Assembly: GCA_951804945.1 (NCBI GenBank) | Contig: OX638162.1 | Span: 55,366,001 to 55,430,000, forward strand | Source of the DNA: Podarcis cretensis | Lineage: Eukaryota | Length of the DNA stretch: 64,000 nt | Direction: 5' to 3' | Part shown: positions 1-62,356 of the stretch, piece after piece | Numbering within the stretch: the first letter of the stretch is position 1 | Layout: each line of letters begins with the position of its first letter | Made by a program: the position numbers and the translations under genes | The notes under the pieces: model-generated | Databases searched by the model: none | What the model was told of the DNA's origin: nothing | Seen by the model: the letters and a program-made list of their open reading frames with translations, nothing else

Positions 1-642
1 CTCACCACTTACCCTGGCGCAGGGACCCTGACTTGGAGAAGAGGGAAGTAGACTCAGTCAAAGCAGCTGGACAGTTGAGACCTGTTATGGATGGCATAAG
101 GGCTGTGTTCCGAATTCAGCTCATGTTTTCCTGCAATGGCAACCGAGACACAAGGAAATGATTGGCTAACCTGAACTACTGGTTCACACTGCTTACTAGG
201 GAGGCCGCCCCAGTGTCTGGGGGCAACTGCCATTAGGAGCATAGGAAACTGCCCTGTACTGACCCACTTTGGTCCACACTGATTCCCTGGCTGTGGCTCA
301 CCAGGATGTCCACCAGCCCAGCTAGAGATGCCGGGGATAGAAACCGGAGCAGGTGGCTCCCTTGTTCCAGGCTGGCTCCCTCATGTCCTTCTGTTGGCAG
401 GTGAAGACTGTTTTATTTCAACAGGTTTTTGGGAACTGACTAAGGTTTTTAGAAGAAAGGGCTTTTAATAGTGCTGCATTTTCCTATCTGCATTTTAGAA
501 GATTTCCTTTCTATATTATTTTAATTCTATTTGAGTTTAATTACTTTTAACAATTATCTTTTACATGTTTTTAGCCTTTTGTATTTTGTTGGTGCTGTTT
601 TAATTGGTGTAAGCTGCCTTGAGTCCCGGATTTGGGGGAAAG

Positions 643-1678: not shown

Positions 1679-14592
<12,914 letters not shown>

Positions 14593-21899: not shown

Positions 21900-23900
21900 C
21901 AGGGAGAGACGGGGTCTTCCTGAGGGTGGCCCCCCTTGCCTTTCTCCCGCCATCTAATTTTCCCTCACGAGAAGCCGCGGGGGGGAGGGGCGCTGAGGCG
22001 AGGGAGGGAGGAGACCAAAGGCGGGAAACTTGGCCGCACAAGACAAGCGTGCGCCTGCGCGCCATGTCGCGGGCGCTTGCGCGGTGGGCAGCGCGGCTTC
22101 TGGTCACGGATTCTTCGCCGCCGCCGCCGCCGCCGCGCGCCCCGCTGGGGTCTCTCCTGTGCGCGCGCCCGCGAGTCCCCGCCCCCCTCGGCCACGGCTT
22201 CCCCGCCTCCCTCCCTCCCGAGCGCGCCTGCGCCGAGCCCCTCAGTGACAGCCGCCTCCGCCCTCGCCCTGCTGCTTCTTCTTCTTCTTCTTCTGCTTCC
22301 CCTTCCCCTTGAGGGCGGCCGAGCCGGCGCCGCGGCCTCCTGTGAGGCGCCTGCAGGGAGGCGGGCGATGCGTCCGAGCGGCCCGCCGTGAGGGAGGCGC
22401 GGCCCTGGCGCAGCGCCATGCGGCGGGGCCCGGAGCGGCCTGGCGGGAGCCCCAGCAGCGCGGTCCTCGGCGGCACCCAGACGCCCGGCAGCGGAGGCGG
22501 CGCGGGCGGCGGAGGAGGAGGAGGAGGAGACGGAGGCGGCCCGCGCTGAGAGCCGCTGCCTAGGGAGAAGGGAGCGCTCGGAGGGCCGCGGCCATGGCCT
22601 CCTCGTCGGCCTCGCCGCCCTCGGGCTCCTCGGCGCACCAGCAGCTCCTGCAGCAGCAGCAGCCTCAGCCTCAGCCTCAGCGGCGCCGGCGGAGCACCGA
22701 GGTGAGCTGCGACTCGAGCGGCAGCGGCGGCGGCGGCAGCGTCACGGTGAGGATCTGCGCCCGGAGCCCCCCGGGGGGGGCGGCCAAGGCCAAGGCCAGC
22801 ATCTCCTCCTCCAGCGGCAGCAGCAGCTCGGGAGACGCGGCGGCAGCGGCGGCGGCCAGGAAGGCCCAGGCGGCGGCGGCGTCGGGCGTCGGGAGAGGCG
22901 TCCGGGGCAAGAAGCGGAGAGAGAAGGGCGGCGGCGGGGGCGGGGGCGCCTTCGGGCTGGGCCTGGGCCTGGGCCTGGGCCTGGGCTCCCGGCGGCGCTC
23001 GACGCGGCTCCCGCAGCTCTTCGAGCGCGCCTCGGCGCAGTGGTGGAACCCCACGTTCGACTCGAGCAACCTGGAGGAGGCCTGCCGGGAGCGCTGCTTC
23101 CCGCAGACGCGGCGCCGCTTCCGCTACGCGCTCTCCTACCTGGGCGCGGCGGGGCTGCTGTGGGGCGCCTACTTCGCGCTGCGGCTGGGGCCCCCCGCCG
23201 AAGGAGGGCGGCGGCGGGGGCGGTGGCGGCAGGCCCCCTTCGTGGCGCCCGCGCTGGCCTTCCTGGCCGCCTGCCTCGCCTTCTTCGCCTTCACCTTCAC
23301 GCGCGCCTACGGGCGCCACCCGGCGCGCACCTCGCTGGCCCTCGTGCTGCTCGTCTTCGCCATCACGCTGGCGCCGCAGCTGCAGGCGCTGGGACCCCCG
23401 GCGGCGGGCCCGGACGAGTGGGGGGGTCCGCCGTCGGGGCCCTGCCTGTCGCAGGTGGGTAGCTTCTCCATGTGCATCGAGGTGCTGCTGCTGCTCTACA
23501 CCGTCATGCACCTGCCCCTCTACCTGAGCTTCTTGCTGGGCCTCTCCTACTCGGTCCTCTTCGAGACTTTCGGCTACTACTTCCGCCAGGAGAGCTGCTT
23601 CTCGCCCTTTGGGGAGCGCCTCCTGGCCTGGGACCTGCTCAGCAAAGCCCTGCTGCACGTGTGCATCCACGCCACCGGCATCCACCTCTTCATCATGTCC
23701 GAAGTCCGGTCCAGAAGCACCTTCCTGAAAGTGGGGCAGTCCATCATGCACGGCAAAGACCTGGAGGTGGAAAAGGCCCTCAAGGAGAGGATGATCCATT
23801 CCGTCATGCCCAGGATTATTGCCGACGACCTGATGAAGCAGGGGGACGACGAAAGCGAGAACTCCGTGAAGCGCCACTCCACCTCCAGCCCCAAAAACAA
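21900..23900 (+). promoter_or_regulatory. CpG island / ADCY9 promoter overlapping the first coding exon
   Basis: Very high GC and CpG density, GC boxes, NRF1-like tgcgcctgcgc (about 22050), (GCC)n and (GGA)n runs. Confidence 0.85.
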
Positions 23901-36400: not shown

Positions 36401-39400
36401 TTTTGTTACACTATCACTGGTTCTGGTGAATAGTCCCCTCACAGGGCCTTTTGAAGACCCCAAAGCTGCAGCTGCCCCCTGCATTCAGCACTGCAATAAG
36501 TTGCTGTTGAGAGTGTGGGATATAAGATACTGTCCGAAGGCAACTTAGAGTGGCCTCCCGGAAGGAGAGCTCCTAGCAATGCAGTCAGAGCTGAGGAATG
36601 CACACAGCTGAAGAATAAAAAGGCAGCTGGCTGCATTTTCCAAGCTGAGAACAAGAAAGCAGGTAAGGGTGACAGTTTGGGGCAAAGCGGAGCCTAGAGG
36701 ATGGAGTGTGGAGGTGCAGTAAGAGGATGGGAGGAAAGGAAGGAAGGAAAGCAAGAAGGTTGAGGACAGGGACAGAGGGGAAGCTTGCTGGGAAGCTTCA
36801 CTCCAGAGCGGGAGGAACAGAAATAGTACGCTTTATTTCCTTGGGTTAAAAAAACATCCTTTTTACCCTATTATACTGAAGAAAGGCCAAAGGAGGGTAA
36901 AAAAGAGATTTTTTTAACCCAAGGAAATAAAGCATACAAATGGACGGAATCAGTGATGAGTTATTTATATGTAAAAAAAATTGTACTGTTTGTTTTATAT
37001 CTGTGTTTTTTAAAAAATATTATATTGCTCTTTGTAAATGGCTTGGAGGTCTTCAGTTGAACAGGTGGTATATAGTCAAAACAAAATAAAAAAATTCCTT
37101 CCAGTAGGACCTTAAAGACCAACTAAGTTAGTTCTAGGTATGAGCTTTCATGTGCATGCACACTTCTTCAGATACACTGAAACAGAAGTCACCAGACCCT
37201 TCTAAATAGTGGGAAGGTGGGGAGGGGTATTACTCAGAAGGGTGGTGGGAATGGGTGATTGGCAGATAGCTGTGATGAGCCTGTTGACGACTCTTAACGA
37301 CTGCAATAGGTCTTACAGGAAAAAGCAAGGGGTGAGAAGGTGAAAAATGGCTTTGTCATGTATAATGAGATAAGAATCCAATGTCTTTGTTAAGACCAGG
37401 TCTCTCCATGGTTTTAAGTTTGGTAATAAGTTGCAATTCAGCAGCTTCTCTTTCCAGTCTATTTCTGAAATTCCTTTGTAATACAACAGCTACTTTGAGA
37501 TCTTGTATAGAATGTCCTGGGAGATTGAAGTGTTCTCCTACTGGTTTCTCTGTCTTGTGATTCCTGATGTCAGATTTATGTCCGTTTATCCTTTGGCGTA
37601 AGGTTTGGCCTGTTTGTCCAATATAGAGAGCTGAAGGACACTGTTGGCATTTGATGGCATACACAATGTTAGACGATGAGCAATTAAATAGTCCCGAGAT
37701 GGTATGTGTGATGTTGTTGGGGCCAGTAATGGTGTTGTCCGGGTGTATGTGGCAGCAAAGTTGGCATCTGGGTTTATTGCAGGCTCTGGTGCCAGTGTCC
37801 GTGTTAAGTCTGGTAGTAGTATTATTGTGGGTTAGGAGTTGTTTAAGATTGGGTGGCTGTCTGTAGGCAATGAAAGGTCTTCCTCCCAGAGCTTGAGAAA
37901 GAGAACTGTCATTGTCCAGGAGAGGTTGTAGATCTCTGATGATGCGTTGTACTGTTTTAACTTGGGAGCTGTATGTGATGACTAGAGGTGTTCTGTTATT
38001 TTCTTTTTTGGGTCTGTCTTGCAGCAAGTTCTCTCTGGGTATCAGTCTGGCTCTGTTGATCTGTTGTCTAACTTCATCTGCTGGGTATTTTAGTTCTAAA
38101 AAGGTTTGCTGTAGATCTCTTAGGTGAGAGTCTCTGTCTGTAGAATTGGAACAGATGCGGCTGTAACGTAGTGCCTGGCTATATACAATGGACTGTTTGG
38201 TATGTTTGGGATGGTAGCTAGAGGCATGTAGATATGTTTGTCGGTCAGTTGGTTTACGGTATAAGGTGGTGTCTATGCGCCCATCCTGTATTTTTATAGT
38301 AGTGTCCAAAAAATGTATTTCTTGCATAGATTGATTCATTGTTAGGTTGATTGTGGGGTGAAAATCATTGAATTTCTGGTGGAAGGTGTCCAGGGTCTGT
38401 TGACCATGTGTCCAGATGATAAAAATATCGTCAATGTATCACAGGTACAAGAGAGGTTTGAGTGGGTAGGAGTTTAGGCACAGATCAGCGGCACAACAAT
38501 GGGCACCCGCATGGCCCCACAGTATGCCAACATCTTCATGGCAGATTTAGAACAACGTTTCCTACAATCAACCTAACAATGAATCAATCTATGCAAGAAA
38601 TACATTTTTTGGACACTACTATAAAAATACAGGATGGGCGCATAGACACCACCTTATACCGTAAAGGGGGCACCCACATATTGGTGCACTGTCTCATTCT
38701 GTTCTTTTTGCCTTTATCTGAAACAGGTTATGAGGAACACCCCCGTGAAGACCTTCGCCAGTGCTACCTTTAGTTCACTTCTGGATGTTTTGCTGTCCAC
38801 AACAGTCTTCCTCATCCTCTCTGTCACCTGCTTCCTGAAGCATGGGATGGCTGCAACTCCTCCCCCACCTGCAGCAGTGGTTGTGGTGGTCATTGCCATC
38901 CTGCTAGAGGTGCTGTCCCTTATCGTCTCCATTAGGTAAATGAGGCAGACTCTGGATCACTCTCACAGGGCGCGTAGGATAGCAGCAGAGGCAGGGCCTG
39001 CTTCTTGGATTTGAAATGGGAATAGCTAAGAATGGGACAGAGAGTTCTGTGAGGGCCTTCGTAGCTCTGTTGTATGGAAAACAGACTCCTCCTTTCACCA
39101 CTTAGAGGTGAGCCAGGACTCTCAGATTTGTACTAGTGGTCCACCCTAGGCCAGGCAAAACCCACTTGAGTCACTTTGGACATAATTAAACGTGTAAGGC
39201 ACCCTAAAGGTGAGAACATGACAGGAAAGGGAAGAGAGCAGGATCCAGCAAAATGGCGGGGCTGCTGCTTCTAGTCTGATTAAGTGAGGAAATCAAGCAT
39301 GCCATTTCCTTGCGTAGAGGCCCGCTCTGAGTGAAGCGGCAGCTATACAGAGAGACTTGCAAAACCATTCCCCTCCGCTCCTTTGCCTTTCTAGGCTCAG

Positions 39401-42400
39401 TTCTGTCATAGATAGAAGCGGCTACACTGCCTGACTTGGATGTGTGTTGTTTTCAGAATGGTGTTCTTTCTGGAGGACGTAATGGCTTGCACAAAACGGT
39501 TGTTGGAGGGGATTGCCGGCTGGTTGCCGCGACACTTCATTGGTGCCGTTTGGATCTCCCTCCCCGCTGTCGCAGTCTTCTCACACTTCAGCTTGGAATT
39601 TGAAACAAACATTTATGTAAGTCATACATTGCTGAATCCCATAACTGGATTGGTTTTTCTGTGCTCCCGCTATATCCTAGGAGGAAGCAGGTAGAGGATC
39701 GAGATTGAGAACCACAAGTTGGCTCTCTCGCTTTCTTTCTTTCTTTCAAAATTCAGTTACCAGAAACGTTGGTGGGTAGATCTTCCCTGGGTGCCCAAAA
39801 GTATGCAGGTTGCTTTCTTCCCGAGAGGAGTTGGAAGCAGTGCTGAGGGAGATGGGAAAGGAAGTGCCTAGCAGGCTAGGGTCCGCCAATTCCAGTGAGC
39901 TGGCTATGGGGTGCTTCATTCTTCAAAGGAGAGAGAGCAGGCAGCATTGGAGAGGCTGGCTGCATGTGAAGCCAACATATGTTAAATGGAGTGAGCGGTG
40001 TTGTGAGCCTGAAGACGGGCGGCAGTGCCAGATCTGCATGTCAGCTAAACAAGCTATAGCTTAGGGCCCCACTCTCTTGGAGCCCCCCAAAAAAATTTAA
40101 AGGAAAAAAACCTGGATGTACATTTCCAAAATATAAGATAAAAAACAAATAAAATAAAACCTACATATAGCAACAGTGTAGGTCCATAAATATAGCATAT
40201 ATTCAACACAAAAAACAGCAACAGTTTGTTGTTGACAAAGGACAGCTGGACATAGAAAGGGCCCCATTACCTTCAGTAGCTGAGGGCCTCATCAAACCTA
40301 AATCCAGCCCTGAGGGGAGACATAATGACTAGTGAAATTTTGGTTTCGTGACCACAGCCATTAAAAAAAGAAAAAAAGTGGATTCCTGTGCATTTACTTA
40401 GACATCCCATTCCAATAGATCATATATGACTAATAGCTGCTGTTTCTGTTTGTTGCAGTATACCATGTTTATGTGTTCTGCAATTCTCATCACTATTGTC
40501 CAGTACTGTAACTTCTGCCAGCTCAGCTCCTGGATGAGATCATCTCTAGCCACTCTTGTTGGAGGAGTCTTGCTAGTTTTGCTGTGGGTGCCTCTGTGCC
40601 CTGACAGGTGAGCCTTTGCCTGTTGCCTGTGAGTTGCGACAGGGTCCTTTCCACAGTGAGGAGTCTTGGAGAGCATCGTCAGGAAGCTGGAGTGAAACAG
40701 GTGTTCTTCTGGCTCATCCACCTGCAAGCAGATTCACCAGGTGTCTTTGTTGGTTAGAAGTGCCGCCACTTTAGCCACCAGATGTATACTTTGACGTTTT
40801 GTGAAGTAATGTGGTTAACCCCTGGGGGGAAGGAGGATTGAGGCTGGTGTAGAACTCCGTGTCAGAATGGGTATCTAGCAGCCCAGAATGAGATTTGGAG
40901 AGTGGCAGCCAGGAGGGGTGTTTCGTTTTTCTCTTTTTGAGGGGTGTTTTTTGCAGCTGTTCTTTTTTTTTCTTTCTCCTCCATGCTTTTGATTTGTTGT
41001 TGTCTGTCTCTTGCGTTTTTGTTTCAGCTCTGTGGAGGAATCATATATTGAATCAGTAAAGAACTTTAGGTAAGCATTCATTGGATTTCCTTTCGTTTCT
41101 GGCTCTTACTGAGCCTGGCAGCCTTTTCCCTAAGTCTTTATATCAACCAGCAGCATTTTTAGACCTTGAACAATTGCCTTCTCCTTCTACCCCACCCCCA
41201 GCTTATATTCACGTGGTTTTGAGAAGCTCTGGTACTCTGTATCTGAAGTCATCGTGCTTTACTGCACGATAGCCACCAGGTGGATTGCTATGCCTTTTCC
41301 TTTTTGGTTTAAGCTTGGATTTGAGGTTCCTTGCGTCCTGCCCATTATTGTTTGGTGTAAGGAAAATGGAAACGGCCAAATGGAGGATAATTATCTCCAG
41401 TTTTTACTTAGATCATTTGTAAGGTGACCAGTTTGTATTTTGGGTCAGTGGGCACTTGGAGCCTCCAGCCTGAGCTTGCCCTACCACTGTCCTGATCCAC
41501 AGGCCTAAAAGAGAGCCTGTGTGAGTGGTTTGATGTAGGGATACCAAAAAAGAATGTAAAAAATGCCAGAACGGCCAATTCCAGTGCATTTTTAGACTGC
41601 ACTAGCCTACAGCGCAGCCTGCAGAGCCTTTATGCCAGGCATAGGCAAACTCGGCCCTCCAAATGTTTTTCAGACTACAGTTCTCATTATCCCTGACCAC
41701 TGGTCCTGTTAGCTAGGGTACTGTAGCATAAACATAATGTGAGCTGATTCTGGCAGCGACTGCCAATTCGTCCTGAATTTATCTTGGCTACCAAGGTGGT
41801 GTTTACAGGCCTTCCAGAACATTTTCCCCGTTTGGTTCTACACAACCACCATGCTCATAAAACATGCACTATGCAGGTGTTAAAATGGCCTTTTCATGTG
41901 AATTGAACTAAACACATTAAGGACCATCTTGTAGACCTGGTTATCCGACACGGACTAAGAAGCTGTAACATGTCAACCTTGGAGACAGCAGAGATACATG
42001 AGGCTCATTGCCCATTTCTGAAGAAATGCTTAATGCAATAACTGATGCATCAGGGCAGAGTCACATTTTGTCAAGCAGCTGTTGCTGCAGTGGGAATAGT
42101 GGCCTGTGAATTTTCTTGCTGATCCAGTGCTTCTTGCATTTCAGTTTCAGCTCCATGGAAATCTTCAACTCTACACAGAACATCAGGTAATCATTAACAT
42201 CTAGCAGTCTTCCTTGCACTTTCTGCTTTCTCCTCAAAGGCTTAAATGAAGTGCTATAACATTTTATTTTATTTTTTAAAAAAGAAAGCTTTAAAAGAAC
42301 TGTTATTTAAAACTATTACAGTGGTACCTTGGTTCTCAAACTTAATCCGTTCTGGAAGTCCTTTCCAAAACCAAAGCATCCCTGCACTGATGATAGTCAT

Positions 42401-45400
42401 TGTTTGGATGGGGTTTTTTTTATCCATTTCCACAGTCACACAATCAGTCAATCAATCAGTAGCTGAACTGGGGTCCATACAGTCATAAAAACAAATTAAC
42501 CAAAAAAGCCTCAAAGACAAAAAATGTAAAATAAATAGCAAAAACAAAAGCGCCAAACTTAATCCATTTCGGAAGTCCATTTAACTTTCAAAATGTTCAG
42601 AAACCAAGGCACAGCTTCTGATTGGTGCAGGTGCCCCGGGAACAGTAGCCGACAGCCGCATCAGACGTTCGGCTTCTGAAAAATGTTCGAGAACCAGAAC
42701 ACTTCCGGGTTTTCAGCGTTTGAGAACCAAGGCATTTAGGTACCAAGGCGTTTGAGAACCAAGGTACCACTGTATGCTATAAAACCTTGCTTGTGTATTG
42801 ATTAGAAACACTAAAAAAGGTCAACTGTACACTGAACTCCATGTCCAAAGAGTTAGACATCAGCAGCCTGCTTCAGAATTTAGCTCAGGAACAACCAAAT
42901 TGACTGTAAAAAAATACCAAATAAACTAGAGAAATATAACAGTTGCCTGGATTTTAAAAAAAGGAAAAATGCAGTGTGTGCCTACATCGGTGCTAGTTTT
43001 GAAGCCTGGTATATGTGGTGTCACAGAAGCGAAAGTGAGGAGAAGAAACGCTCACCATGTGTCTGTACCCTAAATAATGGCAGGAACAGAAGTAGCTGTT
43101 TTCAGACTTAAGCAAATGGTTTTTCATTTAAGGGCTTGATCAACATCAAACTTCATTATTTTCATCACCTCATGATGAATGTCTGAAGCCACCAAGCTAT
43201 ATATAGGTAAAACTCCAGTGGAATCCCTGGGACTAAGAAATGGAAATTCTAAATGTAGATTAAGCTCACTAAATCCTGCAATTATTACCTCTCCTATTCA
43301 TTTCTGTTGATGTTTTGCTATATTTGGATTTCAGCTCCACAGAAATCTCCCATCTTCCGTTAGAACAGAACTATAGGTAAGAATTGATACCTAGTTCTCA
43401 GTTTTTTATGTTTTTCCTTTGCTTGCTTGATCGTTCATATTTCTGAAATGTAGAGAGTGGTGCAGTTAGATTAGTCAGTCATAGACATATTAATCTGCAG
43501 ATAACTGTGACAGATGAAGGTTAAACAGACTCTCACATAAAAACTTGGGATGAGTCTCTTAAGTCTGACAGAATACTTTATTTGACATCTGAGGACCAAA
43601 CTGGACATGATGTGATTTACCCAAGTAGTGACTAATTGTGACACTATCCATGTATGTGTGTGAGAGAGTAGGGGGGGGAGGTGGTAGGGAGAGGGAAAGT
43701 AAATAGCAGTTGAACAAAATCTGGATTGGAACAAAACTGGTACATCATGACATAAGTGGTGAACCTGCAAATGAATTTTGGGATTTTTAGAGGGTTCAGA
43801 AAATTGTGAAACATAATATACTATCAGGACCCAATTGGCCCTCTTAAATCTGTATACAGTGGTACCTCAGTTTTCGAACGTCTCTGTTGACAAAAGTTTC
43901 AGTTTTCGAACGCCGTAAACCCGGAAGTAAATGCTTCATTTTTGAACCCGCCTTGGAAGTCAAACATGAAATGCGGCTTCTGTATTAAGTTTTCCATTTT
44001 GAGGCTTCTGTATTGAGTTTACCGTTTTGGAACTCGAACGGTCTTCCAGAATGGATTACGTTCGAAAACTAAGGTACCACTGTACCAGCTAAAATAAATA
44101 TTTGAAGAATAAGGATTCGATTGTTTGCCTTTTGATGGCAGCACAGAATTTTATTTGGTTTGCTCATTTTGTATTTTATTTGCATATATTTAGTTAAATG
44201 ATTTGTATCTGAGTGATAAAACTTCAAAAGAGTTTTAGGTTTTATTCAACTATGTTTTACTTGAAATATACCCATTGAAATGAATAAAACAATAAAACAT
44301 TTTTGAAAAAGAAACTAGGCAGTGTGGGTGGGTGGGTGGTCTGGATCTTTGCTCACCACAGCCATCCTGATCTGAATCTCCACTCCCCCCACTCCAAAAT
44401 AAAGAGAGTCCCATTGTGTGAATGACACAATGTCTAGTTTGGTCCTGCGCATATGAAGTTGTCATAATTGTCTCTGTTGCCATGGGGGACTAGAAAATCG
44501 TATTTTAAAATAGAATAACATTTTAAAATAGAGTAACGTTGTGTGCTTGTGATTAGAATATAGGAATATAAGAATAGAGAAAACATACAAATGCTTTTTT
44601 CTTTTCTTTTTTACATTTACTCTGTGTATGTGCGTGTGTCTATATTTTCTTTAAAAAATTAACTCCAGTTCCATAAGGAATCCATGCTACCAATCAACCT
44701 TGGAAGACTTCAGGCGGCCAGCAGACCTTATTGGCCATGAAGTGATTCTGGGCTTCTTCCTTCTTCTCCTCCTGGTTTGGTTCTTAAACCGTGAGTTTGA
44801 AGTGAGCTACCGTCTGCATTACCATGGAGACGTGGAAGCCGACCTTCACCGCACCAAGATCCAGAGCATGAGGGACCAGGCGGACTGGCTGCTGCGGAAT
44901 ATCATTCCATACCACGTGGCGGAGCAGCTGAAAGTCTCACAGAGCTACTCCAAAAATCATGACAGTGGTGGCGTGATCTTTGCCAGCATCGTGAACTTCA
45001 GTGAGTTCTACGAGGAGAACTACGAAGGAGGCAAGGAGTGCTACCGAGTCCTGAACGAGCTGATTGGGGACTTTGACGAGCTGCTGAGCAAGCCTGACTA
45101 CAGCAACATCGAGAAGATCAAAACCATCGGGGCCACGTATATGGCCGCCTCTGGCCTGAACACGTCCCAGTGCCAAGACAGCAACAGCCCGCACGGCCAC
45201 TTGCAAACCCTCTTCGAATTTGCCAAAGAAATGATGCGAGTGGTTGATGACTTTAACAACAACATGCTGTGGTTCAATTTCAAACTACGGATTGGCTTCA
45301 ACCACGGCCCCTTGACTGCCGGGGTCATTGGCACCACCAAGCTCCTCTATGACATTTGGGGTGACACTGTGAACATCGCCAGCAGGATGGACACGACCGG

Positions 45401-45860
45401 AGTGGAGTGTCGCATCCAGGTGAGTGAAGAGAGCTACCGCATCCTGAACAAAATGGGGTATGACTTTGATTACAGGGGGACGGTGAATGTGAAGGGCAAA
45501 GGGCAGATGAAGACCTTCCTGTACCCCAAGTGCATGGACAACGGCATCGTCCCCCACCACCAGTTATCTATATCTCCAGACATCCGTGTTCAAGTGGATG
45601 GCAGCATTGGGCGGTCTCCGACGGACGAGATCACCAACCTGGTGCCTTCTGTACAGAATTTGGACAAGACGCCCCACGTCTCGGACCATAATTTGGAGCT
45701 CAAGGGCGGGCTCCCCTCTTTCAAGAATCTCCCAAAAGAGACAGGGAAGCCAGAGGATGGGCGTAGGTTTGGTAAGTCTGTTGAGAAAAACGACTGCAAA
45801 GAAGCAGGTCCCGGTGAGACCAGTGAGCTGACTAAGCTGAATAACTCGCGGAGCTTATGA
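22594..45860 (+). CDS. ADCY9: Adenylate cyclase type 9, complete CDS (1414 aa with one 42-nt micro-exon)
   Basis: Exons 22594-24487, 27099-27271, 31895-31999, 32907-33124, 35416-35518, 38727-38935, 39457-39616, 40459-40607, micro-exon(s) 41028-41069 / 42145(or 42151)-42186 / 43335-43376, 44669-45860. All GT-AG; sum 4245 nt in frame. C1a (SILFADIVGFT, KISTLGDCYYC) and C2a (EKIKTIGATYMA, YDIWGDTVNIASRM) cyclase motifs plus the ADCY9-type STEVSCDSSG and C-terminal tail. Confidence 0.97.
27099..27271 (+). CDS. ADCY9: ADCY9 exon (LKTYLISG...)
   Basis: cctgtag|GT ... AAG|gtttgt; 173 nt. Confidence 0.92.
28170..28338. mobile_element. Tc1/mariner-type MITE
   Basis: TIR ccgtattttt / aaaaatacgg with TA TSD. 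Confidence 0.8.
31895..31999 (+). CDS. ADCY9: ADCY9 exon (TCPSC...DEHKNSTK)
   Basis: ttccag|ACA ... AAG|gtaaca; 105 nt. Confidence 0.92.
32907..33124 (+). CDS. ADCY9: ADCY9 exon (QNGLLSPPQEEKL...VIKED)
   Basis: aatcag|GGC ... AG|gtgaga; 218 nt. Confidence 0.93.
34669..34822. repeat. 154-bp direct duplication, second copy 35829-35982
   Basis: Two mismatches by eye; the copies flank ADCY9 exon 35416-35518. Confidence 0.9.
34828..35077 (+). mobile_element. tRNA-derived SINE
   Basis: A box tggtgtagtggtt, B box gggttcgcatc, core gtgaccttgggccagtcac, (TCT)n tail. Confidence 0.85.
35416..35518 (+). CDS. ADCY9: ADCY9 exon (LMKDYFFKPPIN...YQEE)
   Basis: cctctag|C ... GAG|gtgtgt; 103 nt. Confidence 0.93.
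35907..36195 (-). mobile_element. CR1-like LINE 3' fragment
   Basis: catagaatcatagag terminus; minus frame RTRTHGFKLQGRRFRLNIRKNFLTV. Confidence 0.75.
37075..38665 (-). mobile_element. Penelope-like retroelement (RT C-terminus, Cys-rich linker, GIY-YIG endonuclease), 5'-truncated with 5' inversion
   Basis: ORF 37356-38339: FLDTTI..TTLYRKPTD, CNKPRCQLC, VYAIKCQQC..LYIGQT..LRQRINGH. The upstream YL*YIDD motif carries a stop. 38479-38665 is inverted RT sequence (GTTMGTRMAPQYANIFM). The 3' terminal repeat contains a hammerhead motif. Confidence 0.92.
37138..37175 (-). ncRNA. Minimal type I hammerhead ribozyme in the Penelope-like terminal repeat
   Basis: Minus strand gtat CTGAAGA a gtgtgcatgcacat GAAA gc TC atac; one C>T at the base of stem II. 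Confidence 0.65.
38727..38935 (+). CDS. ADCY9: ADCY9 exon (TM7-8)
   Basis: aaacag|GTT ... AG|gtaaat; 209 nt. Confidence 0.93.
39457..39616 (+). CDS. ADCY9: ADCY9 exon (MVFFLEDVMACTKR...)
   Basis: tttcag|A ... TAT|gtaagt; 160 nt. Confidence 0.93.
40459..40607 (+). CDS. ADCY9: ADCY9 exon (YCNFCQLSSWMRSSLAT...LCPD)
   Basis: ttgcag|TAT ... AG|gtgagc; 149 nt. Confidence 0.93.
41028..41069 (+). CDS. ADCY9: ADCY9 42-nt micro-exon copy a (SVEESYIESVKNFS)
   Basis: Long pyrimidine tract, gtttcag|CTC ... TTTAG|gtaagc; phase 2-2; ends NFS like the mammalian 42-nt exon as recalled. Confidence 0.85.
42145..42186 (+). CDS. ADCY9: ADCY9 micro-exon copy b ([FS]SMEIFNSTQNIS; 42 nt, or 36 nt from 42151)
   Basis: catttcag|tttcag|CTCC ... 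ATCAG|gtaatc; open and frame-preserving from either acceptor. Confidence 0.65.
42319..42772. mobile_element. Tigger/pogo-like MITE
   Basis: 23-bp TIR cagtggtaccttggttctcaaac, TA TSD. Confidence 0.88.
43335..43376 (+). CDS. ADCY9: ADCY9 42-nt micro-exon copy c (STEISHLPLEQNYS)
   Basis: atttcag|CTCC ... TATAG|gtaaga; phase 2-2, no stop. Confidence 0.7.
   Translation, partial: LHRNLPSSVRTEL
43857..44082. mobile_element. Tigger/pogo-like MITE
   Basis: TIR cagtggtacct.agttttcgaacg, TA TSD. Confidence 0.85.
44669..45860 (+). CDS. ADCY9: ADCY9 last coding exon (TM12, C2a, C2b)
   Basis: actccag|TTCC; ORF 44700-45860; stop TGA 45858-45860. Confidence 0.96.
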
Positions 45861-57945: not shown

Positions 57946-58591
57946 CTAGCGGTGGCGGGAGGTCAGGACGCGGGCGACGCTGCCCAGGAATTTGTCCACG
58001 GAAAGGAGGAGCGCCGGGTCGAGGGAGCCGCGGCTGTGGGCACCGACGGTCACCAGGATGCAGTGGTTAAGGCACTGTGGGAGAGAGGAGAGCGCCAGCG
58101 TTAGAGAGAGAGAGCAGGACCCTGGGCCGCCCGACGGGGAGGGCAGCGGGAGGCCGGGGCAGCCTCGGGGAGCGCGACTCACCTCGAAGCTGCTGGGCGA
58201 CACCCGCAGCTGGAAGGCGTGCAGCTCGCTGAGATGGCCGAGGGCGCCGGGCAGGTCGTCCAGGTTCTCGACGGCGCAGCTGAGCGCGTCCACCACCTTC
58301 TTGCCCAGCGCCTTCAGCTGGGCCGAGTCCGGAGAGAGGTCGAGGTGATGGAAGTAGGTCTTGGTGGTGGGGTGCGCCGCCATCAGCCTGCGGGACCAGG
58401 ACAGGATCAGGCCAGCGGCCTCGCCCTCGGGGTTCCAGCCTCCACCCACGGACGGCAGACCTGGGGAGGGTCCCGGAGCCGGCGGGGAGGACTTACCTGG
58501 TGAGCACCTCGACGCCCACGGCTTCGGCGTGTCTGCTCACGGGGACCCAGATGGCCCTCACGCGCTGCTTGTCTTCCTCGGTCAGCCCCAT
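57946..58591 (-). CDS. Divergent alpha-type globin (alphaA-like paralogue, His E7->Leu), 142 aa; exons 58591-58497, 58387-58183, 58074-57946
   Basis: Canonical 95/205/129-nt alpha-globin exons, GT-AG introns. [70 protein letters not shown] box 58638-58643; AATAAA 57891-57896. Confidence 0.93.
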
Positions 58592-59044
58592 CTTGGCAGT
58601 GGGGCGTCCTGGGCGCCGCGCGGGCAGCCAGGCAGCCTTTAATCGGCGCTGCGCAGGGGGCCTCCGACCCGGAGGTCCCGCCCTTCACAGCTGCGTCTGG
58701 GCGCCGCAAGGAGAGGCCTTGCGTGGGCACCACTAGCTGGCTGAAGGCCAGCAACGCGCAAGAGGCCCGGTGGGGACGTGCGTGGCGCCTGGCTCAGTTT
58801 CTTTCCCTGTTTTCGAGCGCTTAGAACTCAGCCCCCCCCCCTCCACCCCCAGGTCGGTGGCGCTCCAGGCGGCTAAGGCTCAAAGGGAGATGCATCAGAC
58901 GGCCAACTCAGGTGGACTCACAGACCACCGTCGAGGCCACTTGGAGCCCGCGGGCGCCTGCTTCTCTCCAATGGGTTTTGGGGACCTTCTCCGGAGGGTA
59001 GTCGCTTACGGGGGCTCTTGGGTATGCCTCTGCCGCCCCCGTCA

Positions 59045-59335
59045 GCCTAGAAACTCTCCGGGTGACCCGGGCCAGTCACAGTCCACCCAATCCGCTTTGA
59101 AAGCCTTCCAAGTTGGTGGTCGTCACTGCCTCTTGTGGGAGAGAGTTCCATGTGCTGCATGAAGGACTTCCTTTTCTGTGTCCTGAATCTTCCTGCATTC
59201 AGCTTCGTTTGGTGTCCACAAGTTCTAGATTAGTGTGATAACACAGAGAGAGAAACGATTCTCTACCCGTTTTCTTCATGCCATGCGTAATTTTATAGAC
59301 TTCTATCATGTCACCTCTCCCTCGTATTTCCTGTA
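59045..59335 (-). mobile_element. CR1-like LINE fragment
   Basis: Minus frame RGRGDMIEVYKITHGMKK. Confidence 0.65.
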
Positions 59336-60440
59336 AAGAGGGGTCCCCAGACCCCAGCGTAACCCACCCAGAGGGTCCGTGGAACAACTGTTCAGCACGT
59401 CCCGTTTTTGGGGGGTCGTGGTCTCCCGCAAGAGCACAGCGCCCCAAATGCACGCTCCCGCCCCTGCCCCCCCCCCGCTGCTTCCCTCCACTGATACCGT
59501 AAAGCTTCGCAGGGCGCCATCCCCGAGTTACCGCCGCCCTCTCCGAGTCTCTTCCGCAGGTGCCTTCAGCCAGGCTCCCACGACCAAGCACCTTGGATCA
59601 CTCTTCCGTGGAGAAGGGGACAAATATCCTGCAAGGGGTCCCCTTCTTTTAAATGCTGCGTTAGTTTAACCCAGGAATTCTGCTGCCACTCACTGTTCTG
59701 CATTCTCACGGACGCTTTTTGCACCCACTGTGTTGCCCATAGGCATGCACGGAAAGAGTGTGCGTGTGGATAGGAATGCAGGGGCATGCAACCCACCCTG
59801 GACGCCTGTCATAACCGCTGCTGTGTTGGTGAAGGGCGTGGGGGACACACGTTGGTTTAAGTCCGCGGCAAAGGCCTCAACTTCCAGGAAAGTCTTGAGG
59901 CCTCGGCTCCTCGGCACGTGGTGACTCTTCATTTGAGCTCTTCCTTGCCCGCCTTGCTCCGTAGATTATTTCCGGGAAACCCCGCCCCCCTTCCTTAAAC
60001 CAGCTTTTTATTTCAAGTATAAAACTGGAATGATTAGAGGCTTCGTGTTTTGTTTTTGTTTTTTTTTTTCAATTTTTTTATTGATTTTCCAAATTTATAA
60101 CAAATAGAAAAAGAACATCAAATATACAAACAAAGAAACATTTATCTTAACTGTAATAATTCCACTTTTGTTAACCTTGTTAGGTGACTTCCTCAAATCC
60201 CTCTGGCTGAGTTTCCATATAAATTATTGTAGCAGTTTTCCAAAACTATTTGCACATAAAATTTACTTAGTCAAATTAACATCTATCTTCCTTTTCATTT
60301 AAACTTTAAACATATTATTCTATAACATCACATATTTAAATCCTAGGCCTATCTTATATTCACAAGTAATTTTATTTAAATTGAAATATACATTTATTAA
60401 GAAACCAGAAGCCTTTCTACTTGGAATAATAGGTCTAGAA

Positions 60441-60589
60441 TAGGTCTGTGTATCTGAAGAAGTGTGCATGCACACGAAAGCTCATACCTAGAACTAACTT
60501 AGTTGGTCTTTAAGGTGCTACTGGAAGGAATTTTTTTTCTTTTATTTTGTTTTGACTATGGCAGACCAACACGGCTACCTATCTGTAAC
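60441..60589 (+). mobile_element. Solo Penelope-like terminal repeat nested in the L1
   Basis: Near-identical to the reverse complement of 37075-37177; flanked by taggtctagaa at 60430-60440 and 60590-60600. Confidence 0.85.
60450..60487 (+). ncRNA. Minimal type I hammerhead ribozyme
   Basis: gtat CTGAAGA a gtgtgcatgcacac GAAA gc TC atac: catalytic boxes, palindromic stem II, stem I gtat/atac, AGCT palindrome in place of stem III. Confidence 0.72.
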
Positions 60590-61589
60590 TAGGTCTAGAA
60601 TTGCCCAAGAAAGAAGTCAGATTGTTTTTGTATGCCACAACCGCAGCCAGAATTTTACTGGCCAAAAATTGGAAAGCACAAGAAGTACCAACAGTGGAGG
60701 AATGGCAGATGAAGATGATGGACTTTTGGGGGCTAGCTGACCTGACCGGAAGAGTCCGGCGGCCAAAAGGAGGAGGACTACCAAGAGGAATAGAATAAAT
60801 TTAAAGATTATTTAGCCAAATATGTTAGAGGCTTCGTGTTGGTTGCTGTGCTGCTGTTTGTGTTCCTTGAGACCCACCCGAAGAAATCTGGTCCCAGTAC
60901 TTTGCTGTGCCGGATACCAAATACTGCACAACGAAGGACATCTGTTTAATACCCATCTTGCCAAACTTCCAACAAAGTGAGAGTGCCCCCCCCCCACAAA
61001 GGGATGTCCCAGACAGTTGATAGGTATGCGTCAGGGACCGTCTGGGTGGGTGACGTGGACCACCAACTGGGAACCCCTGGTCTACAGTATTCCAAGTGTG
61101 GTCGTACCAGAGATTTGTGGAATGGCATTTTGATGATAGCCACAGTTTTAAATTCCAATGCCTTTCCTAAGTTTGCTCGGGAGTCCTCGGAGAGCTACCT
61201 CGCGGGGAGGCCAAGGACAAAATGTCCGCATTCAGCTAGACTGACTGCTACCCTTCTCTGCCGCCCCCGCCGCCGGCTGGTTTGCTGCGCAAAGGAAAGA
61301 CCCATTTGACTTGGTTTGGTTCGGGCCGGAGCCCCGCGGGGGCGGACGAGGACCTCATCCTGGCTTTTTGGAAGGCACCATCCCTCCCCTTTCCTCGTGC
61401 GCCTCCGCCACGCGCGGTTCTAGGGAAAGAACAATGGCCGAAAAGGGGGTGTCACGACTAGCAAATGAGGCATGTCATCGCCCAGGGAGAGCCCGACGTA
61501 GATGCCCGGCAAGGCCTGTCTGGGGGGAGGCAGCGGGAATTGCGCGGAGGCTGTTCGTGCGCTCCCTCTCGCATTCTAGCATTAGCCGT

Positions 61590-61680
61590 AAGAGGCGATA
61601 ACGCGGGGAGAAGCCGCAGCGCCGACGGGCGGAGGCCGAGGGAGAGGCCCCAGGCGGGGCGGGGCGCCCTCAATAAAAGG
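61590..61680 (+). promoter_or_regulatory. alphaA-globin proximal promoter
   Basis: GATAA at about 61597, GC box ggggcggggc at about 61656, ATAAAA at 61673. Confidence 0.65.
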
Positions 61681-61723
61681 GCCGCGCGCGCTCCGACGGC
61701 ACCCGAGACTTTGAGCTGCCAAG

Positions 61724-62356
61724 ATGGTGTTGACCGACGACGACAAGAGCCACGTGAAGCATGTTTGGAGCGAGATCCAGTCCCACGCCGGGGACATCGG
61801 CGCCGAGGCCATCACCAGGTAAGTCCGCCCCGTCGGGCAGGGACCCTCTCCCGGGGACGAGGCCGCGGGCCGGGTGGGACTCGGACCCTCGTCTTCCTGC
61901 TCCTCTCCTCCTCCTCTTCCCGCAGGATGTTCGCAGCGCACCCCACCACTAAGACCTACTTCGCGCACATGGACGTGAGCCCCGGCTCTGCGGACATCAA
62001 GGCGCACGGCAAGAAGGTCGCGGCCGCCATCGGCGAGGCCGTGGCGCACATCGACAACATCGCCGGCGCCCTCGACAAGCTCAGCGACCTGCACGCCCAG
62101 AAGATGCGCGTGGACCCCGTCAACTTCGCGGTGAGTCTCTCTCTCCTCCCCGTCGGGGCTCCGGGGCGGGTGGGATCCCTGCTTCGCTCCGTCCGGGGCC
62201 CCGTCTAACGCTCCCCCTCTCCCGCAGCTGCTGAGCCACTGCTTCCTGGTGGCCATCGCCGCCCACCACCAGGGGCTCCTCAAGGCCAGCACCCTCGTCT
62301 CCATGGACAAGTTCCTGGGCCGCGTCGGCACCGTGCTGACCTGCAAGTACCGCTAG
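61724..62356 (+). CDS. HBA: Hemoglobin alpha-A-like chain, 142 aa; exons 61724-61818, 61926-62130, 62228-62356
   Basis: 95/205/129-nt exons. [54 protein letters not shown]; His58, His87, Phe43, Tyr140 and Arg141 intact; AATAAA 62425-62430. Confidence 0.96.

What the first reader, a model, noticed from the sequence alone, without database searches (positions are those of the whole stretch)
41028..43376. Three tandem paralogous micro-exons in ADCY9, each supplying an N-glycosylation sequon
Seen: between the exon ending LCPD and the last exon are three segments with the same architecture TTTCAG|CTC...AGAACnnnAG|GTAA: 41028-41069 (SVEESYIESVKNFS), 42145/42151-42186 (SMEIFNSTQNIS) and 43335-43376 (STEISHLPLEQNYS). 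All are phase 2-2, stop-free and frame-preserving. Because every downstream exon starts with C or T, the split codon is always Ser, so each copy completes N-x-S; copy b adds N-S-T. Recalled: mammalian ADCY9 has one 42-nt exon here ending NFS, in the extracellular loop before TM12. Inference: a cassette array (mutually exclusive or additive) that varies the sequence, length and glycan load of an extracellular loop; termini and sequon are conserved while the middle diverged. Annotation pipelines would easily miss it.
Basis: partly seen in the sequence, partly recalled or inferred. Interest (0 to 1): 0.85.

Follow-up and report, generated by a model that had tools for sequence, protein, structure and literature searches.

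The report
Triplicated ADCY9 micro-exon in lizards
In this lizard the small exon that encodes the glycosylated outer loop of adenylyl cyclase 9 exists as three old tandem copies; other squamates splice such copies together into one mRNA, so their loop is longer and carries more sugar sites than in mammals, birds, turtles and crocodilians.

Summary
Three segments, a (41028-41069), b (42151-42186, second acceptor at 42145) and c (43335-43376), lie between the ADCY9 exon ending LCPD (40607) and the last exon (44669). All share TTTCAG|CTC...AGAACnnnAG|GTAA: 3 hits in the window, 0 in 100 shuffles. All keep the frame and end in N-x-S.

The decisive evidence comes from other squamates.
- A Phrynocephalus forsythii gene model contains a+b+c in series.
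- An intronless Logan mRNA contig of another squamate (P0510) contains three 14-residue units in series.
- Hemicordylus capensis RefSeq isoforms X1 and X2 differ by exactly the c-type unit.

Copies match their counterparts across species (6-9 of 11-13 residues) better than their neighbours in the window (2-4 of 13). The triplication therefore predates these lineages. All 111 full-length or near full-length mammal, turtle, crocodilian and bird proteins that span the loop have one unit.

My reading is an old squamate-specific exon triplication whose copies are included additively, not one at a time, with at least unit c skippable. This is a new member of a known kind, partly present in public annotation already.

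The parts
40459..40607 (+). ADCY9 exon encoding TM11. It ends ...VPLCPD plus AG, the first two bases of the split Ser codon.
   Evidence: tblastn of turtle ADCY9 P0429 and of Phrynocephalus P0271 against the window; sequence read. The acceptor is ttgttgcag|TATACC and the donor is CAG|gtgagc.
41028..41069 (+). Micro-exon a, 42 nt, S|SVEESYIESVKNF|S, with sequon N-F-S. It is the a-type unit, marked by an S-Y-(ILVF)-(DE) core.
   Evidence: It matches the first unit of Hemicordylus at 8 of 13, and the first units of Phrynocephalus and P0510 at 5 of 13 each. Splice sites are tttttgtttcag| and TAG|gtaagc.
42145..42186 (+). Micro-exon b. It is 36 nt from the acceptor at 42151 (S|SMEIFNSTQNI|S) or 42 nt from the tandem acceptor at 42145 (adds F-S). 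Sequons are N-S-T and N-I-S.
   Evidence: It matches the 12-residue b unit of the Phrynocephalus model at 6 of 11. The middle unit of P0510 has 14 residues, which fits the 42-nt form.
43335..43376 (+). Micro-exon c, 42 nt, S|STEISHLPLEQNY|S, with sequon N-Y-S. It is the c-type unit, STE(IF)..L(PD).EQN.
   Evidence: It matches the unit present in Hemicordylus X1 and absent in X2 at 9 of 13, the third unit of mRNA contig P0510 at 8 of 13, and the single turtle and alligator exons at 8 of 13.
44669..45860 (+). Last ADCY9 exon: rest of the loop, TM12, the C2 catalytic domain, the C-terminal tail and the stop codon (45858-45860). Its first base T completes the Ser codon of whichever exon comes before it.
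   Evidence: Pfam PF00211, E 2.4e-53. It aligns with residues 959-1352 of solved adenylate cyclase type 9 chains, E 4.7e-235. The position that is Asn964 in that chain (NPCNSS) is Tyr here (NPCYQS), so that sequon is missing.

Best explanation
The single 42-nt exon that in other amniotes encodes the middle of the extracellular TM11-TM12 loop of adenylyl cyclase 9, including its N-F-S glycosylation sequon, was triplicated in tandem early in squamate evolution. The three copies, a, b and c, are all genuine coding exons. Each is symmetrical (phase 2 to 2, 36 or 42 nt), so any combination keeps the frame. They are spliced additively: up to all three are included in series, which lengthens the loop by 12 to 28 residues. 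In this lizard the array raises the number of sequons from one to four, because the second ancestral sequon in the last exon is lost here. At least the c unit behaves as a skippable cassette in one relative. Shown here: the sequence anatomy; orthology of each copy across species; co-inclusion in an mRNA contig and in a gene model of relatives; an annotated isoform pair with and without c; and a single copy in every non-squamate amniote sampled. Inferred: that the same splicing occurs in this species, that the sequons are glycosylated, and that the glycan load or loop length has a functional effect.
For: The anatomy and the shared ends exceed chance. The splice sites of b and c are as good as those of the confirmed ADCY9 exons in the window. 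Phrynocephalus forsythii KAJ7306064.1 (P0271) reads LCPD-S|LPESSYVDEAQNF-S|ILEIMNSSQNF-S|FGEPSGLRDGPNY-G|SARNPC. That annotation combined de novo prediction, homology and RNA-seq/PASA evidence (PMC10113879). P0510 is a 676-residue ORF on a 2778-nt Logan contig. It spans at least eight upstream exon junctions without introns, so it is an mRNA, and it reads LCPD-S|SLQKSYLDSTLNT-N|YTRIPSFASVQNF-S|STEFPPLDSEQNY-S|FMENPC. Hemicordylus capensis XP_053164634.1 (432 aa) and XP_053164637.1 (418 aa) differ only by STEIPRLPSEQNN plus Ser. Identity between orthologues is 8-9 of 13 for c-type, 5-8 for a-type and 6 of 11 for b-type, against 2-4 of 13 between paralogues in the window. All 111 full-length or near full-length mammal, marsupial, turtle, crocodilian and bird ADCY9 proteins that span the loop have one unit, and most have a YCNFCQ-to-WFLNREF distance of 92 residues.
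Against: The Phrynocephalus model is a partial EVM model whose supporting evidence type for these exons is unknown. The organism of P0510 is unknown. The Hemicordylus models are short 'ADCY9-like' models without a b-type unit. The Lerista edwardsae model contains only a. The Phrynocephalus c unit lacks the sequon.
Confidence: 0.62

Rival explanations
1. Constitutive loop expansion. In this lizard all three units are always included, so the triplication simply made the loop longer and there is no regulated isoform diversity.
For: All three have strong, near-identical splice sites. The only mRNA contig that spans the region (P0510) and the Phrynocephalus model contain all three. The ancestral single exon is present in every full-length model of other amniotes.
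Against: Hemicordylus RefSeq X1 and X2 differ by exactly the c unit, and neither has a b unit. The Lerista model has only a. Exons of 36-42 nt are often sensitive to regulation; this last point is general knowledge and was not tested here.
Confidence: 0.25
2. Mutually exclusive exon cluster. Exactly one of a, b or c is chosen per transcript, as in classical tandem-duplicated exon substitutions.
For: The array consists of homologous, equal-phase, similar-length neighbouring exons, which is the usual signature of mutually exclusive clusters (PMC9741552 and PMC5740500, listed).
Against: Units are co-included in P0510, P0271 and Hemicordylus X1. No enforcing mechanism is visible. All lengths are multiples of 3, so double inclusion causes no frameshift. 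The introns are about 1.1-1.3 kb, so there is no steric block. All sites are GT-AG. The only long inverted repeats in the intron belong to two transposon-like insertions.
Confidence: 0.04
3. Relics. Only a is spliced in this species, and b and c are decaying pseudo-exons that happen to keep their signals.
For: No transcript data exist for this species. 120 frame-preserving AG...GT segments exist in this intron by chance. Some squamate models contain only a (Lerista, Hemicordylus X2).
Against: Each of b and c has a recognisable counterpart that is included in proteins of distant squamates. Both keep the same length class, order, frame, splice consensus and terminal N-x-S. Meanwhile the intron around them shows no detectable similarity between copies beyond about 20 nt. 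Unselected intronic sequence would not keep this over the divergence seen here; the last exon is only 80-87% identical between these lizards.
Confidence: 0.08

Closest known systems
The single 42-nt penultimate coding exon of ADCY9 in mammals, birds, turtles and crocodilians (encodes ...QNFS, Asn955 in human numbering)
   Same: Same position between the LCPD exon and the last exon, same phase, same 14-codon length and same terminal Q-N-x-S. Window copy c shares 8 of 13 residues with the turtle exon and copy a shares 7 of 13.
   Different: There are three diverged copies here instead of one. The second loop sequon of the last exon (NPCNSS in the solved AC9 chain) is lost in this lizard, where the sequence is NPCYQS.
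Tandem exon duplication that gives mutually exclusive exons (for example the human events catalogued in PMC9741552 and PMC5740500)
   Same: The origin is tandem duplication of one exon, and phase and length are retained over a long time.
   Different: The copies are included together rather than substituted for each other, and nothing enforces exclusivity. ADCY genes are not mentioned in the main text of PMC9741552.
Annotated squamate ADCY9 models: Hemicordylus capensis XP_053164634.1 and XP_053164637.1, and Phrynocephalus forsythii KAJ7306064.1
   Same: The same a-, b- and c-type units occur in the same order, so the feature is already partly present in public annotation.
   Different: No paper found in four literature searches describes or interprets it. 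Those models are partial, and none is from this species.
Ascaphus truei (tailed frog) ADCY9-like XP_075422467.1
   Same: The loop unit, which ends in an N-Y-S sequon, is repeated in tandem and both copies are in the model.
   Different: The two 12-residue units are identical. This points to a recent, independent duplication or an assembly artefact, not to the old squamate array.

Membership tests
ADCY9 (transmembrane adenylyl cyclase type 9) orthologue | Two class III cyclase catalytic domains (C1 and C2) | tested here: met
   PF00211 is found in the first coding exon (E 2.7e-62) and in the last exon (E 2.4e-53).
ADCY9 (transmembrane adenylyl cyclase type 9) orthologue | The best matches are AC9, not another isoform, and include the AC9-specific C-terminal tail | tested here: met
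   The last exon aligns end to end with solved AC9 chains at 783 bits, against 259 bits for AC8 and 248 bits for AC5. Named database hits are ADCY9. The exon order is recovered with turtle ADCY9.
Tandem exon duplication | Adjacent exons with significant sequence similarity, the same phase and similar length | tested here: met
   The shared 9-nt start and 14-nt end give 3 hits against 0 expected. Similarity runs into the flanking intron. Spacing is 1123 and 1184 nt. Lengths are 36/42, 42 and 42 nt, all phase 2-2.
Tandem exon duplication | The copies are expressed as exons | tested here: inconclusive
   Met in relatives (P0510 mRNA contig, P0271 model, Hemicordylus X1).
Mutually exclusive exon cluster | One and only one copy per mature transcript | tested here: not met
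   Two or three units occur in series in P0510, P0271 and P0507. This was tested in relatives only.
Mutually exclusive exon cluster | A mechanism that enforces exclusivity: a frameshift on double inclusion, an intron too short to splice, incompatible splice-site classes, or docking/selector RNA pairing | tested here: not met
   All lengths are divisible by 3. The introns are 1081 and 1148 nt. All sites are GT-AG. The inverted repeats in the intron are the terminal repeats of two transposon-like insertions, not selector sites next to each exon.
N-glycosylated extracellular loop of AC9 | An N-x-S/T sequon (x not Pro) on the extracellular side | tested here: met
   The sequons are N-F-S (a), N-S-T and N-I-S (b) and N-Y-S (c). 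The TM11-TM12 loop is extracellular in the 12-helix topology of the solved AC9 structures; this is established knowledge, and the homology is.
N-glycosylated extracellular loop of AC9 | A glycan is actually attached | not testable with these tools
   This needs a PNGase F shift or glycoproteomics. Glycosylation of human AC9 at Asn955 and Asn964 is recalled from Cumbay and Watts 2004. The reference is listed in PMC13703280, but the paper was not held.

The most novel reading that the evidence does not exclude
The three symmetrical micro-exons form a combinatorial cassette with up to 8 in-frame combinations, or more if both b acceptors are used. Squamates regulate it by tissue or stage to set the number of N-glycans (1 to 4) and the length of the only sizeable extracellular loop of membrane domain 2 of AC9. 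In this way it tunes surface delivery or responsiveness of the enzyme and compensates for the lost Asn964-type sequon in the last exon.
Probability: 0.2. Interest if true: 0.6.

Novelty: new member of a known kind. Interest (0 to 1): 0.45.

Why it matters
ADCY9 is highly conserved. Its TM11-TM12 loop has one unit and an almost fixed length in every mammal, bird, turtle and crocodilian sampled here. Squamates have kept three diverged copies of the loop exon, each still ending in a glycosylation sequon. That is a clean natural experiment on what this loop and its glycans do for a membrane adenylyl cyclase, whose transmembrane domains still have debated functions. It is also a clear case in which tandem-duplicated exons are used additively rather than exclusively. 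In practice it warns that squamate ADCY9 models with a single unit, such as Lerista, are probably incomplete.

Tried and rejected
- **Full-length squamate ADCY9.** The length filter of the search for homologous proteins kept these out of reach. A fish query returned only fish. A bovid query returned mammals, turtles, crocodilians and birds. These served as outgroups.
- **Joined models.** All searches were exon by exon, by reference. Only the two-base and one-base split codons were added inside a script to read the frame.
- **Frame preservation as evidence.** Rejected, because 120 such segments occur by chance in this intron.
- **Docking/selector RNA structures.** Searched for and not found.
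- **Bacterial promoter and terminator scan.** Irrelevant to this locus.
- **Literature.** Searches for ADCY9 with mutually exclusive exons, with microexons, and for AC9 with loop glycosylation found nothing on this feature.
- **Copy a as the sole orthologue of the mammalian exon.** Rejected, because c is equally close to the ancestral sequence.
Full report
**Locus.** The window carries ADCY9 on the + strand.
- The first coding exon starts at 22594 and ends at about 24487. Seven further exons follow at about 27.1, 31.9, 32.9, 35.4, 38.7, 39.4 and 40.46 kb, located by tblastn with turtle ADCY9 P0429.
- The last exon is 44669-45860.
- Both cyclase domains are detected (PF00211).
- The last exon aligns end to end with residues 959-1352 of solved AC9 chains at 783 bits, against 259 bits for AC8.
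- Sarcalumenin-like ORFs lie upstream and alpha-globin genes lie downstream.

**Observation.** I read 40400-45200.
- The TM11 exon ends ...LCPD plus AG at 40607.
- Three segments follow, all preceded by TTTCAG and followed by GTAA: a at 41028-41069, b at 42151-42186 (a second AG at 42144 gives an alternative start at 42145), and c at 43335-43376.
- In phase 2 they read S|SVEESYIESVKNF|S, S|SMEIFNSTQNI|S and S|STEISHLPLEQNY|S.
- The composite pattern occurs 3 times in 64 kb and never in 100 shuffles. No fourth, degenerate copy exists.
- Frame preservation is not evidence in itself, because 120 AG...GT segments in this intron also keep the frame.
- What is unusual is the shared ends. Similarity runs about 20 nt into the upstream intron (TCTTGCGTTTTTGTTTCAG against TCTTGCATTTCAGTTTCAG, 82%). 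ATT-A is shared at +7 to +11 of each downstream intron. The spacing is regular, at 1123 and 1184 nt.
- The acceptors and donors of b and c are as close to consensus as those of the confirmed exons of the same gene.

The decisive test, junction reads, could not be run.
- I therefore used protein collections, searching single exons by reference.

**Outgroups.**
- A search seeded with a long bovid ADCY9 protein returned 120 rows: the query itself plus 119 other mammal, marsupial, turtle, crocodilian and bird proteins.
- In 111 of the 119 the loop could be read between two conserved motifs, or by the second motif alone. Every one has a single unit, for example turtle STETSHLDSVQNF, bird SMETFHLDLAQNF and primate SVLTSPLDAVQNF.
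- In most of them the distance from YCNFCQ to WFLNREF is 92 residues.
- Several shorter models of camel, whale and pangolin lack exactly these 14 residues. Several bird models replace them with translated intron. So the unit is a discrete small exon that gene predictors do lose.

**Squamates.** A search with the first 140 residues of the window's last exon ranked squamates first.
1. Phrynocephalus forsythii KAJ7306064.1 (P0271) reads LCPD-S|LPESSYVDEAQNF-S|ILEIMNSSQNF-S|FGEPSGLRDGPNY-G|SARNPC. That is units of 14, 12 and 14 residues in the same order and length classes as a, b and c here. The genome was annotated with de novo, homology-based and RNA-seq/PASA evidence merged by EVM (PMC10113879).
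2. P0510 turned up when cluster members were listed. It is a 676-residue ORF on a 2778-nt Logan contig and runs from the exon-4 region to the stop codon without introns, so it is an mRNA. It reads LCPD-S|SLQKSYLDSTLNT-N|YTRIPSFASVQNF-S|STEFPPLDSEQNY-S|FMENPC, which is three 14-residue units in one transcript. Its flanks resemble the skink Lerista, but its organism is not given.
3. Hemicordylus capensis RefSeq isoforms X1 (XP_053164634.1, 432 aa) and X2 (XP_053164637.1, 418 aa) are identical except that X1 has STEIPRLPSEQNN plus Ser between ...SAQNFS and SRDNPC. This is an annotated cassette of the c-type unit.
4. The Lerista edwardsae model has only an a-type unit.

**Orthology of the copies.** Gapless identities were computed.

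| Comparison | Identity |
|---|---|
| window c vs Hemicordylus unit 2 | 9 of 13 |
| window c vs P0510 unit 3 | 8 of 13 |
| window a vs Hemicordylus unit 1 | 8 of 13 |
| window a vs Phrynocephalus a | 5 of 13 |
| window b vs Phrynocephalus b | 6 of 11 |
| copies within the window | 2-4 of 13 |

- Counterparts in different species are more alike than neighbours in one genome. The triplication therefore predates the split of these lineages, and the copies have not been homogenised since.
- The lizards involved are far apart. Their last exons are only 80-87% identical to the window's, no closer than turtle or bird.
- From general knowledge, a cordylid or skink-like lineage and an agamid share an ancestor near the base of non-gekkotan squamates. 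The age of the array is an inference, not something measured here.
- Both a (7 of 13) and c (8 of 13) resemble the single turtle exon, so neither is 'the' orthologue.

**Mechanism.**
- Every unit has phase 2 to 2 and a length divisible by 3, so all combinations are in frame.
- Every possible downstream exon begins with C or T, so the split codon is always Ser and each unit ends N-x-S.
- With all three units the loop of this lizard carries four sequons: N-F-S, N-S-T, N-I-S and N-Y-S.
- With a alone it carries one, because the position that is Asn964 in the solved AC9 chain (NPCNSS) is Tyr here.
- Co-inclusion in P0510, P0271 and Hemicordylus X1 argues against mutual exclusion.
- Nothing in the DNA would enforce exclusion. 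Double inclusion causes no frameshift, the introns are 1081 and 1148 nt, all sites are GT-AG, and the only long inverted repeats belong to two transposon-like insertions.
- The Hemicordylus pair shows that at least c can be skipped.
- My best reading is an additive cassette array. Purely constitutive inclusion in this species remains a serious rival.
- The loop is extracellular according to the established 12-helix topology of AC9. Glycan attachment is inferred from the sequons and from my recollection of Cumbay and Watts 2004, which I could not read.

**Novelty.**
- Tandem exon duplication is a well-known process, and its best-known outcome is mutually exclusive splicing (PMC9741552 and PMC5740500).
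- Four literature searches found nothing on ADCY9 exon duplication or on this loop in reptiles. A 2026 paper on AC9 evolution does not mention reptiles or glycosylation.
- The units are already present in some public gene models, so this is a real and neat, but moderate, finding: a new member of a known kind.

Noticed in passing
window 42317-42774 and 43855-44084: Two related transposon-like insertions (MITE type) with near-perfect terminal inverted repeats starting TACAGTGGTACC (25 nt at 100% and 27 nt at 96%). They sit in the introns on either side of micro-exon c, in the same orientation. Parts of one can pair with parts of the other (78 nt at 74%, 75 nt at 73%). In a pre-mRNA that pairing would loop out exon c and might favour its skipping.
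   Followed up: partly
window 42139-42151: Micro-exon b has tandem acceptors six bases apart (TTTCAG|TTTCAG|CTCC). Both keep the frame and the Ser split codon. The 42-nt form matches the 14-residue middle unit of mRNA contig P0510, and the 36-nt form matches the 12-residue unit of the Phrynocephalus model.
   Followed up: partly
window 41067-41075, 42184-42192, 43374-43382: Because all three donors are AG|GTAA in phase 2, failure to splice any of them reads AGG TAA (Arg, then stop). An intron-retaining transcript would therefore end right after the unit and encode an AC9 without TM12 and C2. A Chrysemys RefSeq isoform X4 (P0441, 960 aa) ends a few residues after its single unit in the same way.
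   Followed up: no
P0297 (Ascaphus truei XP_075422467.1), residues before the last-exon part: The frog model contains two identical 12-residue loop units in series (SSLIPESDTNY plus Ser, twice). This is either an independent recent duplication of the same exon or an assembly duplication.
   Followed up: no
window 41009-41027, 42132-42150, 43312-43334: Each copy keeps a TTGC (UGC) motif 13-19 nt upstream of its acceptor, and an ATT-A motif at +7 to +11 after its donor, although the rest of the introns is unalignable. These may be shared splicing control elements. UGC upstream of small exons is a known SRRM3/4 feature (general knowledge, not tested).
   Followed up: no
window 1738-14592 (+) and 57946-62208: Neighbouring genes. 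Upstream on the + strand there are sarcalumenin-like ORFs: an acidic N-terminal region at 1738-3171 and a dynamin/EHD-like part at 11.1-14.6 kb. Downstream there are two alpha-globin-like genes on opposite strands, which other notes of this scan already cover.
   Followed up: no
window 37356-38339 (-) and 38462-38773 (+): Inside an ADCY9 intron there is a 327-residue ORF on the minus strand, and on the plus strand a shorter related ORF that shares the stretch LTMNQSMQEIHFLDTTIKIQDGRIDTTLYRK. They look like fragments of a retroelement, inserted in opposite orientations.
   Followed up: no
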